From Thecamonas trahens ATCC 50062 (Eukaryota > Protista > Apusomonadida), in NCBI RefSeq assembly GCF_000142905.1, contig NW_013657666.1, positions 196,631-260,630 of the forward strand: a stretch of 64,000 nucleotides of DNA, written 5' to 3'. The notes under the pieces were generated by a model. That model was not told the origin of the DNA and did no database searches. It was given only the letters and a program-made list of their open reading frames with translations. This document shows, piece by piece, positions 24,846 through 32,556 of the stretch. Every line of letters begins with the position of its first letter. Position 1 is the stretch's first letter. Made by a program: the position numbers and the translations under genes.

Positions 24846-25146
24846 CTCGAACCTATTGGGGGGAAGGCCTGTCCCGCTGAGTGTACAAGTCAGGTGAGGG
24901 TAGCGTTGCAGTCTTACCGTGTGTTCGGCGTTCGAGTGGGGGGGAGGGGGGGGGGCAAAAAAAGGTCGTGAAGTGGGCAAGGGTTTAGGGTGGGCGGCCG
25001 GCTGGCAAGCTAGGCGCAAGCGAGTTGTCGCTCACACGAGCGGGCATAGGCAACAACACACGGCTTACGGACGAGACAAACGGGAGGCAGGTTGGACTGG
25101 ACCGCAGCGCAGGTAGATACCAGACAAGATCGTGTCAAGCTTGCGT

Positions 25147-27626
25147 ATGGGCCTAGACAGGTTGGGCGTGGCCATGGCCGTGGCTGTCGTCATGGCGGTG
25201 GTCGTGGCGGACGTTGTCACGTGCGTGGCGGGAAGCACACCATGTGAGAGCCACAAGACATGTCCGACGTGCTCAGCAGGGAGCAAGGAGTGTCTCTGGT
25301 GTGCTGCTGGGGGTGTGCCGCATTGCTACAACGTGACGGCACACCCGCACGCGTGTGACGAGGCGTGTGTGTCACCAGCATGCAACGCAGGCGGATGTGA
25401 GGCGCACCTCGACTGCCGGACGTGCGCAGCGGACAGCGGGTGCGGGTGGTGCTCGCAGTCGAGGGCGTGTATGCAGGGCACGGCCTCGGGGCCGTGTCAA
25501 AACGGCATGTGTGCGCAGTCCGAGTGGAACTTTGCCAACTGCTCGAACAACTGTCCGCTCTTTGAGGGCTGCGCCGAGTGCACGGCTGCGCCGGGCGACG
25601 GCTGTGCGTACTGCCTCACCGAGGAGGTGTGCGTGGGCGGTGACGACGCCCACAAGTGCCGGTGTGCGCGTGAGTCGTGCGGAGTGTGTGAGGCCAAGAC
25701 TGGGTGTGCCGATTGCACCGACGATCCTGCGTGCGGATGGTGTGCGTCGGCAAACGGTGGCAAGGGCGGGTGCCTGCCTGCGTTTGACCAGCACGAGCCG
25801 TGCGACAAGGGCGCATGTCCGGCGCCACTGGCCAAGAACTGGCAGTATGGCAAGTGCGCCGTCAACTGCACTCTGTTCTCAGCAAGCTGTGCAGAGTGTA
25901 CCGCCCACTACGCGGACTCGGGCTGCGAGTGGTGCGAGGCGACCGAGGCGTGCCTCGCCCCGGCGCAGTTTACCTCGTGTCCTGCGTGCCTGGTCTCGAC
26001 CTGTCCCGACTGTGGAAGCTACGAGAGCTGCTCCGAGTGCATCGGAGACGCAAGCTGTGGATGGTGCTCCGAGTCTGAGGCGTGTGTGCCGGGAGAGGCC
26101 GGCGGTGCGTGCGGCGGGCCGCAGGTCTGCCCGGCGCCGGAATGGAACTACGAGACGTGCGCGGCCGACTGTGCGTCACTCGAGACGTGCACCGCGTGCA
26201 CGGCGATGGCGACTGAGGCCGGCTGCCGCTGGTGTGCCGACGAGGGCATCTGCCGCTTTGGGCCCGAGTTCAACGGGACAGCGTGCCGATGCGTCCGTGA
26301 CTTTTGCCCGGCCACCAGCTGTTCGGCGCTCTCGGGCACATCTTGCGCACAGTGCGTGGCGACTCAGGGCTGCGGGTGGTGCCCCGAGACGGCGTCATGC
26401 CTCTCGGGCTCTGACGCTGGGCCGTGCTCGTCCACCGCGCAGTGCAAGGCAGGATGGTCGTACGGAACATGTGACGGGACGTGCGGGCAGCACGGCGACT
26501 GCACGTCGTGTCGGGCCGACACCGAGGCGGGATGTGGGTGGTGCGCTGGGACGCAGGCGTTCCCGGGCTCGCTCACGCCGGTCTCGCTCTGCGTCCAGGC
26601 CGATACGTCCGACTCTGCGCCGGCCGACGGCCGGCAGTGCGCGCGTTGGTACGGCTCGCACAGCAGTGAGACGTGTCCAGCGTGCGGTGATAGCGAGCAC
26701 AACACGTGTCAGACGTGCACGACTGATGCGTCGTGTGGATGGTGCGGCGAGTTTTGTCGCGAAGGCGACGCCAACGGCCCGTTCAACTCCCCGGGCTGCT
26801 CATCGTGGTCTTTCGGCGACTGTCAGTCCGAGTGCCCACTGGTGGGCAACTGTGGCGACTGTGTGCAGGTGCCTGAATGCGGGTGGTGCAAGAACCCGCT
26901 GCACATTGGCGGCTTTTGCACCGGTGTCGATTCCAAGTCTCAGTGCTACGAGTGGCAGCCATCCAACTGCGAGCCCGAGTGCGAGACGAACCTTGTGTGC
27001 TCGGCTTGCACCGCCAACTCGTCGTGCGGGTGGTGCGAGTCCAAGGGCTCGTCCGGCTCGACGGCGACGTGCGTGCGCGGGACCGGGCAAGGCCCGCTCG
27101 ACACGACGTGCTCGCTCGGCTGGTCGTATGGCCACAAGTCGTGTGTCTCGTCGTGTGCCCGCTATCTCGACTGCGGCTCGTGCGTGCTCAACGCTGATTG
27201 CGGATGGTGCTCGGCAGCCGGTGGTGCATGCATGGCCGGCAAGTTTGACGGGCCGGACCAGGGCGTGTGTCCGCCCGACGACTGGACCCATGCGCCGTCG
27301 GTCTGCTCGTCGCCGTTTGACAACTGCGTTGCGCACACCGAGTGCTCCTCGTGCATCGCGCGCAACTCGTGCGGCTGGTGCGATGCCGACAAAAGTGCTA
27401 CTCCGGCCACAAGTCGTCGCCCATCGCGCCTAACACCTGCCCGCGCGACTGGCTCTTTGCCTCGTGCTCGGCCGCCCTCCCCATCCCGGCGCGCTCCAAG
27501 GAGCTCTCTCCCTGGGTCGTCGCCGCCATCACCGCCGGCGCCATCCTTGTCCCCATCGTCGGCGGCGCCGCCTACATGTACCGTCGCTACCTCGCCAAGT
27601 ACGGCTACCCCGCACTCGAGGGGTGA
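25147..27626 (+). CDS. Type I membrane protein made of many PSI-like Cys-rich repeats; frame break near 27391-27394
   Basis: Signal-like N-terminus and more than 12 copies of CxxC...CGWC....C. Adding one A to AAAA continues the frame as KKCYSG...WVVAAITAGAILVPIVGGAAYMY (TM) RRYLAKYGYPALEG*. Confidence 0.8.
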
Positions 27627-28066
27627 AGCTCGGCATTGGCATTCAACTTTGCGACTACCACCAACTGACTCGGGCTGCACCCGTTTCGGCGTTTGGCGGT
27701 CGGCGGCGTGTTGCGGGTGGCGGGCAACTCTCGTCTCTCCAACCAGTATGTACATTGAGCAGGCTAAACAAGCCGTGTCCTGACGGCATGGGCCCAGCAA
27801 AGCGAGAAAACATGGACTGGACGTGTGTGCAAGGTGTATACCTCGTGCTACATGCTACAAAGGACATGATTTGTGGTTGCAGTGGCCGCAGAGGAACCGG
27901 GTGGCCTGTGGAGGGTGTGTGGAGAGATGGCGCGCGATACGAATCAAACTCACAAAACTTGAAATTTTCATGTGGCGGGCTTCCGGGCACTGGCACGAAC
28001 ACAGCCTGTATCCTCAAACCACCACTACCACTCACCACACCAACACCGTCTACGACCTACCTAGCT

Positions 28067-31000
28067 ATGTCCATCGTAGTTATTGACAAGAGCGGAGCCG
28101 ACCGGATGCGTGTTCCGCTGCATGGGACGTGCACTTTCGGCCGGGCACCCGAGTGCGACGTCCGGGTGCAAAAGTCGGACGTCTCACGGCAGCACTGCCA
28201 GCTCGCCATCGACGAGAACGGCAAGTGCGTGCTGACGAACCTGTCGTCAACCAATGCAACGTATGTCGACTCTGAGGCGGTCGAGACACACATGATTCTC
28301 GAGTCCGGCATGATGTTTGCTGTCGGGCCGCGGTACTTTCGCTACGAGGCGCCCGAGGGCATCGCGGTGAGCAAGAAGGCCGAGGCCACGCCAGAGCCGG
28401 CGCCCACGGCGGCGCCAGCACCTTCGTCTGTTGTCAAGGCTGTCCAGCCGGTGCCTGCGTTCCAGTGGACCGAGTCTGAGGCCTCGCCAACGACCCAGGC
28501 CAAGTCTCAGCAGTTGAGGGCGATGCAGACGCCGCTGCGGCGCGAGATTGCCGCTCGCGGCTCGCGCCCGAACCCGGTGTTCCAGGACAAGGCCAATAAG
28601 ATGGCCACGCCGCTCAAGCGGGCGCTTTTCCAGGAAGCTCAGGCCCGTCAGCGCACCTTTGCCGAGTTCTCAGACGCCGACGCCGACGCCTCGTTTGCGT
28701 CCGACGCAACAGACACTGAGCTCGGCATGTTTGAGGACGAGGAGCTGTCTATTATTGCACCGCGCAAGCTCATGCAGGTTCTCAACACTCCGCTCAAGGA
28801 GGACATTGCCAAGCGCGGTGCCACCAAGCTTGACGTTGTCTATGTCTCGGACGCACCAGTTATGGCGACGCCGATGAAGAAGGCGATCCGCAAGCGCGGT
28901 GCTGCCAAGCGCGAGGTTGTGCCGGTGGCTGACGCGCCGGTCATGGCGACGCCGATGAAGAAGGCGATCCGCAAGCGCGGTGCTGCCAAGCGCGAGGTTG
29001 TGCCGGTGGCTGACGCGCCGGTCATGGCGACGCCGATGAAGAAGGCGATCCGCAAGCGCGGTGCTGCCAAGCGCGAGGTTGTGCCGGTGGCTGACGCACC
29101 GGTCATGGCGACGCCGATGAAGAAGGCGATCCGCAAGCGCGGTGCTGCCAAGCGCGAGGTTGTGCCAGTGGCTGACGCGCCGGTCATGGCGACGCCGATG
29201 AAGAAGGCGATCCGCAAGCGCGGTGCTGCCAAGCGCGAGGTTGTGCCGGTGGCTGACGCACCGGTCATGGCGACGCCGATGAAGAAGGCGATCCGCAAGC
29301 GCGGTGCTGCCAAGCGCGAGGTTGTGCCAGTGGCTGACGCGCCGGTCATGGCGACGCCGATGAAGAAGGCGATCAAGGCCAAGGCCAATGCGTCGCGCAT
29401 CCCTACGCCCAAGACCATGGCAACGCCGATGAAGAAGGCAATCCGCAAGCGCGGTGCCGCCGAGCGTGAGGTTGTGCCTGTTACTGATGCTCCGACGATG
29501 GCGACGCCGATGAAGAAGGCAATCAAGGCCAAGGCTAGCGAGTCGCGCATTCCGACCATCAACACGGCTCCGGTCATGGCGACGCCGATGAAGAAGGCAA
29601 TCAAGGCCAAGGCTAGCGAGTCGCGCATTCCGACCATCAACACGGCTCCGGTCATGGCGACGCCGATGAAGAAGGCAATCAAGGCCAAGGCTAGCGAGTC
29701 GCGCATTCCGACCATCAACACGGCTCCGATCATGGCGACGCCGATGAAGAAGGCAATCAAGGCCAAGGCTAGCGAGTCGCGCATTCCGACCATCAACACG
29801 GCTCCGATCATGGCGACGCCGATGAAGAAGGCAATCAAGGCCAAGGCTAGCGAGTCGCGCATTCCGACCATCAACACGGCTCCGATCATGGCGACGCCGA
29901 TGAAGAAGGCAATCAAGGCCAAGGCAGCCGAGCCGCGAGCGGCAGTGAGCAAGCCGATCGAGGAGAACTCCTCCCAGCACAAGAAGACCAGCAAGTCGAA
30001 GAAGAAGAAGAGGTCTGCCGTCCGCAAGCCCATCAAGCACGCTCAGCCAAAGGAGTATGTGCCGAAGGCTGCGCCTGCCGCTGTCAAGGTTGCGGCTAAG
30101 GTTGTGGCTGAGGTCAAGGCTGAGGTCGAGTCCGAGGTCGAGGCTGAGGTCGAGGTCGAGTCCGAGGTCGAGGCTGAGGTCGAGGCCGAGGCTGAGGTCG
30201 AGGTCGAGTCCGAAGTCGAGGCTGATGAGGTCGAGGCCGAGTCCGAGGTTGAGGCTGAGGTCGAGGTCGAGGCTGAGGTCGAGGCCGAGGTTGAGGTCGA
30301 GGTCGAGTCCGAGGTCAAGGCTGAGGTCGAGGTCGAGTCCGAGGTCGAGTCCGAGGTTGAGGTCGAGGTCGAGTCCGAGGTCGAGGCTGAGGTCGAGGTC
30401 GAGTCCGAGGTCGAGTCCGAGGTCGAGGCTGAGGTCGAGCAAGAGGTCGAGGTCATTAACTACTCCAAGTGGAAGGTCGTCGAGCTTCGTGCCGAGCTCT
30501 CTTCCCGCGGCCTCGCCACTACTGGCCGCAAGGCTGAGCTTATCGCCCGCCTCGAGTCTGCCCCTACCGATGCCGCCGACAGCGCTGCTGCCGCAGTCGA
30601 GGCCGAGGCTGAGGTCGAGGCAGAGCCCAAGATCGAGGCAGAGCCCAAGATCGAGGCCATCAACTACTCCAAGTGGAAGGTCGCTGAGCTGCGTGCCGAG
30701 CTCTCGGCCCGTGGCCTCGCCACTACCGGCCGCAAGGCTGAGCTCGTCGCTCGTCTCGAGGCCAATGCCTCAGCCCCCGTGTGCTCGTCGGCAGCTGCTG
30801 AGGAGACCGAGCCGACTCCCGAGTCAGAGGCCCAGACCGTCGACTACTCCAAATGGAAGGTTGCTCAGCTCCGCACCGAGCTCTCCACCCGCGGCCTCGA
30901 CACTACGGGGCGGAAGGCCGAGCTGGTGGCCCGCCTCCAGACCGCCGGCGACGCCTCCACCACTGACGCGATCAAGGTTGCCGACCAGGCCATCGATGCT

Positions 31001-31135
31001 GATGACGCTCAGGCCCAGCCGATTAACTACGCCAAGTGGAAGGTTGTTGAGCTTCGTGCTGAGCTCTCATCCCGTGGCCTCTCGACCGCCGGCCGCAAGG
31101 CTGACCTGGTCAAGCGTCTCGCCGATCTACAGTGA
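28067..31135 (+). CDS. Ki-67-type FHA + TPxK tandem repeats + acidic block + four SAP domains (1022 aa)
   Basis: FHA: IDKSG.D...CTFGR.PECDVRVQ...VSRQHC...NLSSTN.T...RYFRYE. Fourteen copies of MATPMKK. Four copies of YxKWKVxxLRxELSxRGLxTxGRKAxLxxRL. Confidence 0.85.
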   Translation: MSIVVIDKSGADRMRVPLHGTCTFGRAPECDVRVQKSDVSRQHCQLAIDENGKCVLTNLSSTNATYVDSEAVETHMILESGMMFAVGPRYFRYEAPEGIAVSKKAEATPEPAPTAAPAPSSVVKAVQPVPAFQWTESEASPTTQAKSQQLRAMQTPLRREIAARGSRPNPVFQDKANKMATPLKRALFQEAQARQRTFAEFSDADADASFASDATDTELGMFEDEELSIIAPRKLMQVLNTPLKEDIAKRGATKLDVVYVSDAPVMATPMKKAIRKRGAAKREVVPVADAPVMATPMKKAIRKRGAAKREVVPVADAPVMATPMKKAIRKRGAAKREVVPVADAPVMATPMKKAIRKRGAAKREVVPVADAPVMATPMKKAIRKRGAAKREVVPVADAPVMATPMKKAIRKRGAAKREVVPVADAPVMATPMKKAIKAKANASRIPTPKTMATPMKKAIRKRGAAEREVVPVTDAPTMATPMKKAIKAKASESRIPTINTAPVMATPMKKAIKAKASESRIPTINTAPVMATPMKKAIKAKASESRIPTINTAPIMATPMKKAIKAKASESRIPTINTAPIMATPMKKAIKAKASESRIPTINTAPIMATPMKKAIKAKAAEPRAAVSKPIEENSSQHKKTSKSKKKKRSAVRKPIKHAQPKEYVPKAAPAAVKVAAKVVAEVKAEVESEVEAEVEVESEVEAEVEAEAEVEVESEVEADEVEAESEVEAEVEVEAEVEAEVEVEVESEVKAEVEVESEVESEVEVEVESEVEAEVEVESEVESEVEAEVEQEVEVINYSKWKVVELRAELSSRGLATTGRKAELIARLESAPTDAADSAAAAVEAEAEVEAEPKIEAEPKIEAINYSKWKVAELRAELSARGLATTGRKAELVARLEANASAPVCSSAAAEETEPTPESEAQTVDYSKWKVAQLRTELSTRGLDTTGRKAELVARLQTAGDASTTDAIKVADQAIDADDAQAQPINYAKWKVVELRAELSSRGLSTAGRKADLVKRLADLQ
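28862..29925 (+). repeat. Coding tandem repeats: six near-identical 81-bp units, two intermediate units, five 78-bp units and a partial unit
   Basis: Units start at 28862, 28943, 29024, 29105, 29186, 29267, 29348, 29417, 29498, 29576, 29654, 29732, 29810 and 29888; each begins ATGGC(G/A)ACGCCGATGAAGAAGGC. Confidence 0.95.
30108..30452 (+). repeat. Coding (GAGGTC/GAGGCT/GAGTCC)n low-complexity repeat encoding an E-V/A/S acidic block
   Basis: Seen directly. Confidence 0.9.
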
Positions 31136-31149
31136 GGTATCGTGTCGCG

Positions 31150-32370
31150 TTAAATGTGTACTCTTGCAACCCCGGAGTCGGCGTCAGCAGCACAAAGACG
31201 TGGCCAGCGACTGGAGCGCGACCGGCGTAATGTGACTTTTGTGTCGGCGACAGTCAGCGCTAGCCGTCCGCCGCTCTCGTCTGCGCGCACGATGTCATTC
31301 GGTGTCGCTGCAGAAGCCCACCGCAGCGCGATCGACGACGAGCCCGGGCGGATCGATCGCCCCAGTACTAGATCATCACCAAGGGCGGAAACCAGAGTAC
31401 CGTCATCTCTTTTCTGCCACAGCTGGTTGGCCCAATGCCGCTTCCGTGCCCGCCGCTTCCGATAGAGCACGACACGTGCCCCGTCATCGGTCTGCCCGTA
31501 GTCGACATCTACGACGAGTCCGGAGCTGGCGTGCTCAAGATGCATCCAAGGTGCAAACTGCGACGCGACGAGGGAAAATCCATCGATGGTCTCTTGCACC
31601 CGGGCCGTGTATGCCAGCTCTATCACGGCAGCATGCGGAATCATGTCAAACGCTGCGTTGACAAAGGTGGTGCCATCTCGGACCTCACTGTGCGCGCCGT
31701 ACTGGTGAACGTGGCCGAAAAGATGGAGCCGGGCAGACGAGGCAAGAACCCGCTCGCGAAGGGCGGCATCTCCCCAGTGGCGTCGCCACGCTGGATGGAC
31801 TTTTCCGCATACACGACACTCGTAGTCGCTCCCGCTCCGTCCATTCGACGCCAGATCGAGGATGCCTGCCGGAGGCATGTGTGTGACGATGACGTCGACG
31901 TCTTCGGGACAGGTTTGCCATCGCGAGGCCCTCGCTGCAGCGTCCGGCTCGCCAAACATGTGGCTTCGCGACGCACTTGTCCACGGCGATCCCCAGACCC
32001 GCAGCCCAAAGGGAGCCACGATGGTGTCCGAGTCCTGCAGGTAGTGGGTCGCGTTGTCCAGCGCTTGGCCTATCTCGTCCGCGCTCATCCCTTTGAACGC
32101 GATGTCATGGTTGCCGAGCACAACAATCCTGGCCTCATACTCGAGCGCTAGCTCGCCGAGCCAGGCGTTAAAGTCGCGGGCGAGTGCTTTGCGCTCTTTA
32201 CGCGGCGCGTGGCGATCGATAAAGTCCCCCGAGACCACCAGCACATCGCCCGGTGGCAGAGCAGCCGTCGTCTCGCGATGCCGCCCGTGCAAATCTGACA
32301 GATGCACGATCGTCACATGGTCCGACCCGCTCCCTGCACTCACACTATTCACCATCAGTGTGTCATCCAT
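31150..32370 (-). CDS. Calcineurin-like metallophosphoesterase (MPPED/239FB-like) with a C-terminal ricin-B-like segment
   Basis: SDLHG, SGDFID, GNHD, VTHMPP, HLFGHVH. Tail SSGLVVDV...DGARVVLY...NQLW. Confidence 0.85.
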   Translation of the reverse strand: MDDTLMVNSVSAGSGSDHVTIVHLSDLHGRHRETTAALPPGDVLVVSGDFIDRHAPRKERKALARDFNAWLGELALEYEARIVVLGNHDIAFKGMSADEIGQALDNATHYLQDSDTIVAPFGLRVWGSPWTSASRSHMFGEPDAAARASRWQTCPEDVDVIVTHMPPAGILDLASNGRSGSDYECRVCGKVHPAWRRHWGDAALRERVLASSARLHLFGHVHQYGAHSEVRDGTTFVNAAFDMIPHAAVIELAYTARVQETIDGFSLVASQFAPWMHLEHASSGLVVDVDYGQTDDGARVVLYRKRRARKRHWANQLWQKRDDGTLVSALGDDLVLGRSIRPGSSSIALRWASAATPNDIVRADESGGRLALTVADTKVTLRRSRSSRWPRLCAADADSGVARVHI

Positions 32371-32556
32371 CGCTCCACCACACACCCTGGAACCTGGTCT
32401 GCCTGTTCACGATCGCCTTCATTGCCCTTGCCGCCGAGCCAGTTTTTGATGGTGGTAGGCGTCGAAGACCCGCGAAGGAAAGAAGGAATTCGCCCAGCCA
32501 TCGCTGACAGCATCGACCGCCACTGCCCACCACTCCACCCGCCCGACCCCCACCCT

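What the first reader, a model, noticed from the sequence alone, without database searches (positions are those of the whole stretch)
28067..31135. A Ki-67-like chromosome-coat candidate in a protist: Ki-67-type FHA, CDK-site repeats, acidic block, four SAP domains
Seen: the N-terminal FHA (IDKSGAD..PL..TCTFGRAPECDVRVQ..VSRQHC..NLSSTNAT..RYFRYE) closely parallels human Ki-67 as I recall it (IKRSGVD..PL..TCLFGRGIECDIRIQ..VSKQHC..NFSSTNPT..RSFRYE). It is followed by 14 basic repeats, each with T-P-M-K (full CDK consensus), a roughly 115-aa acidic block and four SAP DNA-binding motifs. Established: Ki-67 consists of an FHA, CDK1-phosphorylated tandem repeats and a C-terminal chromatin anchor. It acts as a mitotic chromosome surfactant and is usually described from vertebrates. 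Inference: the same design with unrelated repeats and SAP anchors points to an ancient or convergent perichromosomal-layer system. I saw no RVxF PP1 motif.
Basis: partly seen in the sequence, partly recalled or inferred. Interest (0 to 1): 0.82.

Follow-up and report, generated by a model that had tools for sequence, protein, structure and literature searches.

The report
Thecamonas Ki-67 homologue with SAP anchor
This intact gene of the flagellate Thecamonas trahens encodes a true early-branching relative of the proliferation marker Ki-67; a June 2026 preprint already lists this protein, but neither its four DNA-binding SAP domains nor its family-wide repeat motif is mentioned there.

Summary
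Window 28067-31135 (+) is one uninterrupted 1022-aa ORF. It holds an N-terminal FHA, 3 degenerate plus 14 near-identical TP[LM][KR] units, a 116-aa Glu/Val block and four SAP domains.

The FHA is of the Ki-67 type:
- Its best solved-structure match is human Ki-67 (E 5e-17); the next is Rad53 (3e-6).
- It sits in a 99-100% supported Ki-67 clade.
- It is the reciprocal best hit in its genome.

This is not new. Haider et al. (bioRxiv 10.64898/2026.06.18.733134) list this very protein, Thecamonas trahens A0A0L0D4Q8, as a Ki-67 homologue.

What I add:
- The C-terminus is a folded SAP array.
- FHA-plus-SAP proteins of this clade also occur in a choanoflagellate (with the Ki-67/RepoMan PP1-binding domain), a haptophyte and an unnamed marine eukaryote. 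The last is colinear with Thecamonas.
- The repeats are not unrelated. Their TP[LMV][KR]xxI core recurs in cnidarian, choanoflagellate and unnamed environmental (JGI) Ki-67-like proteins.

The PP1 motif, KI67R repeats and a NIFK-type ligand are absent. A chromosome-coat function remains untested. The scan's earlier notes cover this same stretch only, not other DNA.

The parts
28067..31135 (+). Whole single-exon gene, 1022 codons plus stop; identical in its properties to UniProt A0A0L0D4Q8 of Thecamonas trahens
   Evidence: ORF and translation. Length, D+E 14.87%, FCR 0.3101, NCPR 0.0127, 21 S/T-P and no RVxF all equal Table 1 of the preprint. Single copy in the genome.
28067..28366 (+). Ki-67-type FHA domain (aa 1-100). 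The canonical GR...SxxH...N phosphothreonine-binding residues are present (G25, R26, S40, H43, N63).
   Evidence: Pfam FHA E 2e-14. PDB best hit is human Ki-67 FHA at E 5e-17, against 3e-6 for Rad53. It scores 62-80 bits to 51 N-terminal Ki-67-type FHAs and at most 47 bits per domain to all others. Clade support is 99/97 and 100/97. Reciprocal hit E 5e-21.
28367..28852 (+). Linker (aa 101-262) with three degenerate repeat units (TPLR at 155, TPLK at 181 and 241) and an acidic stretch. This is the position where relatives carry the PP1-binding domain, which is not detectable here.
   Evidence: Motif positions. Pfam gives no PP1_bind hit at E<=1. A local PP1_bind HMM scores 1.9 bits, while shuffles reach 12. 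BLAST to Mylnosiga aligns this stretch to its PP1_bind region, but only as part of the FHA-driven HSP.
28853..29941 (+). Tandem basic repeat array (aa 263-625): 14 units of 26-27 aa in two subtypes. Each unit has ATPMKKAI with a full CDK consensus. Net charge is +63.
   Evidence: TRF finds 81 bp x 6.5 and 78 bp x 5.8 copies at 97-98% matches. Counts and charges. A repeat HMM built without Thecamonas units hits all 17 units at 7-16 bits, against a shuffle maximum of 7.4.
29942..30106 (+). Lys-rich basic patch (aa 626-680, net +13), NLS-like
   Evidence: Composition. The NLS reading is an inference.
30107..30454 (+). Acidic block (aa 681-796), a strict Glu-[Val/Ala/Ser] alternation with net charge about -54
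   Evidence: TRF period 12/18/30 arrays at 30106-30454. Composition.
30455..30562 (+). SAP domain 1 (aa 797-832)
   Evidence: Pfam SAP, 4 stretches, E 3e-59. Motif positions.
30659..30766 (+). SAP domain 2 (aa 865-900)
30839..30946 (+). SAP domain 3 (aa 925-960), the best Pfam stretch (926-959)
   Evidence: It aligns to the third SAP of P0212 within a four-SAP colinear alignment, E 7e-19.
31022..31126 (+). SAP domain 4 (aa 986-1020). The protein ends two residues later, with no RRGR-type basic tail.

Best explanation
This is an intact gene of Thecamonas trahens (Apusomonadida, the sister lineage of animals plus fungi). It encodes a deep-branching member of the Ki-67 family.

Shown:
- A Ki-67-subfamily FHA (a phosphothreonine reader) sits at the extreme N-terminus.
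- There are 17 units carrying a full CDK consensus TP[LM][KR], in a strongly basic block (+76 with the Lys patch).
- An adjacent acidic block carries a charge of -54.
- Four SAP DNA-binding domains end the protein.

Inferred mechanism:
- The tetravalent SAP array tethers the C-terminus to chromosomal DNA.
- The basic repeat block binds nucleic acid or folds back on the acidic block.
- CDK phosphorylation of up to 17 sites (about -34 charge) releases or extends it in mitosis.
- The FHA at the free end then captures pThr-Pro ligands. No NIFK-type ligand is detectable in the genome. The protein's own phosphorylated TP units are a candidate, and that would cross-link molecules.

The net result would be a chromatin-anchored, cell-cycle-gated charged brush, as in Ki-67, but without PP1 recruitment.

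Confidence is about 0.85 for family membership and architecture. It is about 0.3 for an actual perichromosomal or surfactant role.
For: FHA:
- PDB best hit is human Ki-67 at E 5e-17; the next is Rad53 at 3e-6.
- A full HMMER scan of 1.84 billion representatives gives a bimodal result. 51 N-terminal Ki-67-type FHAs score 62-80 bits and all other FHAs at most 47 bits per domain. Names confirm Ki-67 proteins.
- ML trees place it in the Ki-67 clade at 99/97 and 100/97, with four Thecamonas FHA paralogues outside. In the first tree it is sister to all opisthokont members at 98/95, as the species tree predicts.
- An annelid Ki-67-type FHA finds only this locus in the genome, at E 5e-21; the next hit is 0.03.

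Architecture shared beyond the FHA:
- Mylnosiga fluctuans P0111 has FHA + PP1_bind (E 8.5e-12) + TP repeats + 2 SAP.
- P0192 has the same set.
- P0212 has FHA + TPM[KR] repeats + an acidic region + 4 SAP, colinear with Thecamonas.
- The haptophyte P0226/P0234 has FHA + RVSFG + 2 SAP.

Repeat motif: it is shared with cnidarian, choanoflagellate and unnamed environmental (JGI) members.

Published support: the preprint lists the same protein and reports an AlphaFold3-predicted fit of its FHA to human NIFK.
Against: - No PP1-binding RVxF/KiR-SLiM.
- No KI67R repeat here or anywhere in the genome.
- No hNIFK_binding motif in the genome. The preprint also scores its own NIFK as non-binding.
- Whole-protein net charge is only about +13, far below vertebrate Ki-67.
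- The SAP profile has no similarity to the vertebrate C-terminal tail, hhalign probability 0.1%. The anchors are therefore analogous, not homologous.
- There are no localisation, expression or phosphorylation data for this organism.
- The tree outgroups were drawn from hits to the query itself. The branching order inside the clade is unresolved.
Confidence: 0.7

Rival explanations
1. Same ancestry, different job. The protein is an interphase chromatin or nuclear-scaffold adaptor. Its SAP domains bind DNA and its FHA recruits phosphoproteins, for example in ribosome biogenesis, replication or the damage response. It has no role at the mitotic chromosome periphery.
For: The PP1 module that drives the mitotic-exit function of Ki-67/RepoMan is missing. 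Net charge is near neutral. No NIFK-type ligand is found. SAP domains are typical of interphase scaffold-attachment proteins (established knowledge of SAF-A, SAFB and PIAS).
Against: 17 full CDK consensus sites concentrated in one block argue for mitotic regulation. The repeat motif and layout are conserved with animal Ki-67-like proteins. In the preprint, Ciona and Drosophila homologues expressed in human cells reorganise chromatin, and the Ciona protein localises like human Ki-67, whereas the Drosophila one does not enter nucleoli.
Confidence: 0.3
2. The functional unit is only FHA plus SAP. The TPMK array and the Glu/Val block are recent, largely neutral low-complexity expansions.
For: Units are 97-98% identical at the DNA level, and the acidic block is a 12-bp microsatellite-like array. 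The related P0208-P0221 proteins differ by whole 56-aa units, a copy-number polymorphism.
Against: The TP[LMV][KR]xxI core is kept in five distinct Thecamonas unit types and in distant lineages. An acidic region lies between the repeats and the SAPs in P0212 as well.
Confidence: 0.15
3. Convergent mosaic. A Ki-67-type FHA was joined independently to SAP domains and repeats in Thecamonas, so the layout says nothing about the ancestral protein.
For: SAP domains are short, mobile modules. The best SAP-array hits (P0206, P0207) lack an FHA. Animal and fungal members have no SAP.
Against: The same order (FHA, TP repeats, acidic region, SAPs) occurs in P0212 with four SAPs. FHA...SAP occurs in Mylnosiga, P0192 and a haptophyte. 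All these FHAs lie in the Ki-67 clade.
Confidence: 0.07
4. Gene-model or assembly artefact, for example a collapsed repeat or fused genes.
For: Near-identical tandem units are prone to mis-assembly, so the unit count may be wrong.
Against: The frame is open over 3069 nt. The FHA starts at residue 3, as in all family members. The stop lies 14 bp from a convergent gene. The length equals the public model.
Confidence: 0.02

Closest known systems
Vertebrate Ki-67 (MKI67, human P46013; FHA structures 1R21/2AFF)
   Same: The N-terminal FHA is of the same subfamily (about 42% identity, E 5e-17). Both have a long low-complexity middle part of tandem repeats rich in CDK sites, a DNA-binding C-terminus and a basic pI.
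   Different: The Thecamonas protein is one third the size. It has no RVxF/KiR-SLiM PP1 module and no 122-aa KI67R repeats. Four folded SAP domains replace the LR tail, with which the SAP profile shows no similarity. It has a 116-aa acidic block, its net charge is near zero, and no NIFK C-terminal ligand is found in the genome.
Non-vertebrate Ki-67 homologues of Haider et al. 2026 (bioRxiv 10.64898/2026.06.18.733134), e.g. Acropora/coral P0153-P0155, Rhopilema P0152, Mylnosiga fluctuans P0111
   Same: They fall in the same FHA clade. They share ~20-27-aa repeats built on [ML]xTP[LMV][KR]xxI. Mylnosiga also has C-terminal SAP domains. The preprint's Table 1 already lists this Thecamonas protein.
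   Different: Those proteins keep PP1_bind and have G-x-x-L-[KR] after the core, plus RRGR-type basic tails. Thecamonas lacks all three. The preprint treats everything after the FHA as disordered and mentions neither the SAP domains nor the shared motif.
P0208-P0221 family (P0212, 1156 aa) of an unnamed marine eukaryote (ENA/JGI metagenome contigs up to 989 kb)
   Same: It is colinear over its full length: Ki-67-clade FHA, 9-15 TP[LMVI][KR] units (mostly TPM[KR]), an acidic region and four SAP domains. It also has no RVxF.
   Different: The FHA carries an insertion and is only about 30% identical. The repeat units are 56 aa long and not basic. The organism is unknown.
SAP-domain chromatin proteins (SAF-A/HNRNPU, SAFB, PIAS, Ku70, NuSAP)
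   Same: They share the SAP helix-extended-helix DNA-binding module that tethers proteins to chromatin.
   Different: None is known to me to combine SAP with a Ki-67-type FHA, and they usually carry a single SAP. No paper in the searched library joins Ki-67, FHA and SAP domain.
RepoMan (CDCA2)
   Same: It is a chromatin-bound, CDK-regulated mitotic scaffold that shares the PP1_bind module with Ki-67.
   Different: That shared module is exactly what is missing here, and RepoMan has no FHA.

Membership tests
Ki-67 family | N-terminal FHA of the Ki-67 subfamily (InterPro/CDD FHA_Ki67 type) | tested here: met
   PDB E 5e-17 to Ki-67 against 3e-6 or worse for other FHAs. A score gap of 62-80 bits against at most 47 bits. 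Clade support 99/97 and 100/97. Reciprocal best hit.
Ki-67 family | PP1-binding RVxF plus KiR-SLiM (Pfam PP1_bind PF15276; motif as defined in PMC5005033) | tested here: not met
   No Pfam hit at E<=1. No strict RVxF. A local HMM of 54 family PP1_bind regions gives 1.9 bits, within the shuffle range. Only the (S/T)PL[KR][KR] core recurs. The preprint also records 'no'.
Ki-67 family | Tandem repeats with many CDK (S/T-P) sites in a low-complexity middle region | tested here: met
   17 full-consensus sites and 21 S/T-P. Tandem arrays. The core motif is shared with non-vertebrate members.
Ki-67 family | Vertebrate-type 122-aa Ki-67 repeat (Pfam KI67R PF08065) | tested here: not met
   No hit in the protein or in the whole genome. 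The genome search rang in none of its 14 control genomes, so its negative says little; the protein-level Pfam scan is the test. Non-vertebrate members also lack this repeat.
Ki-67 family | C-terminal chromatin/DNA-binding region (the LR domain in vertebrates) | tested here: inconclusive
   A DNA-binding C-terminus is present, but as four SAP domains. hhalign finds no relation between the SAP profile and the vertebrate tail. The analogy is met; homology is not shown.
Ki-67 family | FHA ligand NIFK with the C-terminal hNIFK_binding segment (PF12196) | tested here: not met
   The best genome hit is E 0.89 at 14.6 bits, below the cut-off. The preprint states that the NIFK C-terminus is not conserved, although AlphaFold3 docks human NIFK.
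Ki-67 family | Highly basic protein whose charge reverses on CDK phosphorylation | tested here: inconclusive
   pI is about 9.0-9.6 and net charge about +13. The preprint gives +11.4 going to -30.8. Charge is strongly segregated: +76 in the basic part and -54 in the acidic block.
Ki-67 family | Nucleolar or perichromosomal localisation and chromosome-dispersal activity | not testable with these tools
   No experimental data exist for Thecamonas. Only Ciona and Drosophila homologues were tested in the preprint.
SAP-domain DNA-binding proteins | SAP motif (Pfam PF02037) above the gathering score | tested here: met
   196 bits against a cut-off of 23.9, in four stretches.

The most novel reading that the evidence does not exclude
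The ancestral Ki-67 was a SAP-anchored protein with FHA, an RVSF/PP1 site, CDK-gated TP[LMV][KR]xxI repeats and C-terminal SAP domains. It existed before apusomonads and opisthokonts split. Because a haptophyte also has such a protein, it may date to near the root of eukaryotes. On this reading, animals later replaced SAP with the LR/RRGR tail, vertebrates replaced the short repeats with 122-aa units, and Thecamonas lost PP1 binding. In Thecamonas the FHA may read the protein's own CDK-phosphorylated TP units, so that mitotic phosphorylation cross-links SAP-tethered molecules into a coat on chromosomes.
Probability: 0.3. Interest if true: 0.7.

Novelty: new variant of a known kind. Interest (0 to 1): 0.45.

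Why it matters
Ki-67 is a major proliferation marker and the organiser of the mitotic chromosome surface, and its origin was long thought to lie in vertebrates.

- The kinship of this protist protein is already public as a preprint table entry, so the headline claim is not new.
- The SAP-anchored layout and the shared repeat core are not described there.
- If they hold, they give the family a folded, assayable DNA anchor and a candidate functional repeat unit.
- They also provide a choanoflagellate intermediate that carries both the animal PP1 module and the protist SAP anchor.
- They offer a small (1022 aa), intron-free version that is convenient for biochemistry and for rescue tests in MKI67-knockout cells.

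Tried and rejected
- A word-based homologue search with the FHA region found nothing. This is a limit of the tool, not a sign of absence.
- An exact look-up of the protein returned nothing, because records of the window's own genome are withheld.
- Single-sequence AlphaFold2 of the FHA was unusable, with pLDDT 44.
According to the preprint, FHA folds do not discriminate subfamilies anyway.
- A 'relic PP1-binding domain' at aa 150-188, suggested by the BLAST extension to Mylnosiga, is rejected. The profile score is within the shuffle range.
- A weak PP1_bind hit elsewhere in the genome (C27, 20.8 bits) is low-complexity sequence without RVxF.
- The idea that the vertebrate LR tail is a degenerate SAP is rejected by hhalign.
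- The WH2 reading of the family repeats rests on one sub-threshold Pfam hit and does not apply to the Thecamonas units.
- ESM Atlas hits scored below 0.9 and were uninformative. The second Atlas call failed.
- The genome search with long proteins failed twice. A short query worked.
- The organism of the P0208-P0221 family could not be named from its neighbouring genes.
Full report
**Observation**

Window 28067-31135 (+) is a single open frame of 1022 codons in a 64% GC region. Pfam finds an FHA domain at aa 22-87 (E 2e-14) and four SAP domains (E 3e-59, 196 bits).

Between them lie four segments:
- A 162-aa linker with three degenerate units (TPLR at 155, TPLK at 181 and 241).
- Fourteen near-identical 26-27-aa units of two subtypes, each with ATPMKKAI. 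They are encoded by 81-bp and 78-bp arrays with 97-98% matches.
- A Lys-rich patch.
- A 116-aa strict Glu-[Val/Ala/Ser] block encoded by a 12/30-bp array.

There are 17 full CDK consensus sites and 21 S/T-P sites. No strict RVxF, SILK or LxxIxE motif is present. Charge is segregated: repeats +63, patch +13, acidic block -54, whole protein about +13.

**Identity of the organism and the protein**

Earlier notes of this scan name the genome as Thecamonas trahens. I tested this against a preprint found by literature search: Haider et al., bioRxiv 10.64898/2026.06.18.733134, June 2026.

Its Table 1 lists Thecamonas trahens A0A0L0D4Q8 with these values: 1022 aa, D+E 14.87%, FCR 0.3101, NCPR 0.0127, 21 S/T-P, no PP1 motif, and repeats '15x25+'. 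My values computed from the window ORF are identical to the last digit.

So this very protein has already been proposed as a Ki-67 homologue. [quoted passage not shown] Taxid 529818 is Apusomonadida. By established phylogeny this is the sister group of Opisthokonta.

**Is the FHA of the Ki-67 type?**

- Against all PDB chains, the best hits are human Ki-67 FHA 2aff/1r21 (E 5e-17, 65 bits, about 42% identity over 93 residues). Rad53, GarA/OdhI, MDC1, CHFR, NIPP1 and the others lie at E 3e-6 or worse.
- A full HMMER scan of 1.84 billion representatives gives a bimodal picture. 51 proteins with one FHA at residues ~5-103 score 62-80 bits (40-48% identity). All other FHA domains score at most 47 bits per domain.
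- The 51 are named Ki-67 proteins of fishes, birds, reptiles and a tunicate, with KRVSF, PP1_bind and KI67R, plus a choanoflagellate protein.
- Maximum-likelihood trees (LG+C20, 102 columns) put the Thecamonas FHA inside a Ki-67 clade with 99/97 support (27 rows) and 100/97 support (30 rows). Four other Thecamonas FHA domains and 30 other FHAs fall outside.
- In the first tree it is sister to all opisthokont members at 98/95, as the species tree predicts. In the larger tree the internal order is unresolved.
- The gene is single-copy, with the next FHA in the genome at E 1.8e-4. An annelid Ki-67-type FHA fragment finds only this locus, at E 5e-21 against 0.03 for the next hit.

**What else is shared with the family**

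(a) SAP domains.
- Mylnosiga fluctuans (choanoflagellate, EukProt) P0111 has a Ki-67-type FHA and the Ki-67/RepoMan PP1_bind domain (E 8.5e-12). Its sequence fits the KiR-SLiM FDxxLP(P/A)N(T/S)PL(R/K)(R/K)Gx(T/S)P defined in PMC5005033. It also has TP repeats and two SAP domains.
- P0192, an environmental transcript, has the same set.
- A word search with the Thecamonas SAP region returned 23 hits. Eleven of them carry FHA plus SAP in the precomputed Pfam lists: ten of the P0208-P0221 family and P0226. Three further members of that family are N-terminally cut gene calls that keep a partial FHA.
- The P0208-P0221 family comes from an unnamed marine eukaryote. The spliced form P0212 has an FHA, 11 TP[LMVI][KR] units (mostly TPM[KR]; 9-15 across the family's variants), an acidic region and four SAP domains (Pfam E 3.5e-44). 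It is colinear with Thecamonas in BLAST, with SAPs at 7e-19, FHA at 8e-7 and repeats at 2e-6.
- P0226 has FHA, RVSFG and two SAPs. Its cluster mate P0234 is from the haptophyte Tisochrysis lutea.
- All these FHAs fall in the Ki-67 clade. Cnidarian, tunicate, vertebrate and fungal members have no SAP.

(b) Repeats.
- The core [ML]xTP[LMV][KR]xxI recurs 7-20 times in coral, jellyfish, Mylnosiga, P0192, P0196 and P0202 proteins.
- Apart from Thecamonas itself (17 copies), all 11 proteins with 7 or more copies either have a Ki-67-clade FHA or, as P0203-P0205, lack an FHA and carry PP1_bind.
- No other protein among the 205 examined, vertebrate Ki-67 included, has more than 2 copies.
- An HMM built only from non-Thecamonas units hits all 17 Thecamonas units at 7-16 bits. 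The best score in 2000 shuffles is 7.4.
- One caveat applies: the units were picked with a regex anchor, and the Thecamonas units are not independent of each other.

So 'unrelated repeats' is true only against the vertebrate KI67R. The preprint states that the non-FHA part has no conserved sequence and never mentions SAP. No paper in the library joins Ki-67, FHA and SAP domain.

**What is missing**

- PP1_bind is not detectable. Pfam gives no hit. A local HMM of 54 family regions scores 1.9 bits, within the shuffle range.
- Only the (S/T)PL[KR][KR] core is shared, and it is also the repeat core.
- The genome has no KI67R match (though that search rang in no control genome, so it shows little), no convincing PP1_bind and no hNIFK_binding motif.
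- The SAP profile is unrelated to the vertebrate C-terminal tail.
- Unlike Mylnosiga, cnidarian and fish proteins, Thecamonas has no RRGR-type basic tail.

**Mechanism (inferred)**

The SAP array gives multivalent DNA tethering at the C-terminus. The adjoining acidic block and the basic, CDK-site-laden repeats form an oppositely charged pair. Phosphorylation at up to 17 sites (about -34 charge) would shift their balance. The FHA sits at the far end as a pThr reader.

Human Ki-67 FHA reads pThr-Pro sites in NIFK. With no NIFK-type ligand in this genome, the protein's own pTP units are a plausible ligand. None of this was tested.

The main rival is a purely interphase chromatin adaptor of the same ancestry. 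Convergent assembly is unlikely given the colinear relatives.

**Verdict**

The feature is real, and its Ki-67 kinship holds up under independent tests. However, that kinship was published five months before this scan, so the headline is not novel.

The undescribed parts are three:
- the SAP-anchored variant of the family and its spread across protists;
- the choanoflagellate form with both PP1_bind and SAP;
- the conserved repeat core.

Function at the chromosome periphery remains a hypothesis.

Noticed in passing
P0153, P0152, P0111, P0192, P0202 (related proteins, not the window): The ~22-aa repeats of cnidarian, choanoflagellate and unnamed JGI (P0192, P0202) Ki-67-like proteins fit the WH2/beta-thymosin pattern L-x3-I-x2-G-x2-L-[KR]-x-[TV]. 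Pfam WH2 gives only one sub-threshold hit (P0192 aa 486-498, 18.1 bits against a cut-off of 23.1). Thecamonas units keep only the first half.
   Followed up: partly
window 30107-30454: The acidic block is a strict period-2 alternation of Glu with Val/Ala/Ser, which is a beta-strand-like pattern. It is encoded by a 12/30-bp microsatellite-like array. Pfam gives only noise-level Bactofilin and MspA hits.
   Followed up: no
P0208-P0221; loci L010-L012: Variants of the FHA-repeat-4xSAP protein of an unnamed marine eukaryote differ by whole 56-aa units (1046, 1102, 1158 and 1214 aa), a repeat copy-number polymorphism. The gene has one short intron inside the FHA, so ENA gene calls start at an internal Met. 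The organism could not be named (GC 57%, contigs up to 989 kb).
   Followed up: partly
P0001 (Coregonus sp.): This gene model has two Ki-67-type FHA domains (about aa 7-97 and 1046-1109). It probably represents two tandem gene copies fused by annotation.
   Followed up: no
P0111, P0192, P0196, P0202, P0193, P0152 and fish Ki-67 C-termini: Repeated RRGR/KRGRK AT-hook-like motifs recur in the C-terminal tails across choanoflagellate, fungal, cnidarian and fish members. Thecamonas lacks them, apart from an RKRG inside its type-A repeat.
   Followed up: no
window 31135-31150 and 31150-32385 (-): A convergent metallophosphoesterase-like ORF ends 14 bp from the stop codon of this gene, so no C-terminal extension of the protein is possible.
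   Followed up: partly
window 27464-28066: The reading frame stays open for about 600 nt upstream of the ATG, back to a GTG, and this stretch has no similarity to anything. The FHA begins at residue 3 from the ATG, as in all relatives, so this is a stop-free 5' region and not coding sequence.
   Followed up: partly
window 25132-27783 (+): The upstream neighbour is a large Cys-rich protein made of PSI-like repeats. It is unrelated to this finding.
   Followed up: no
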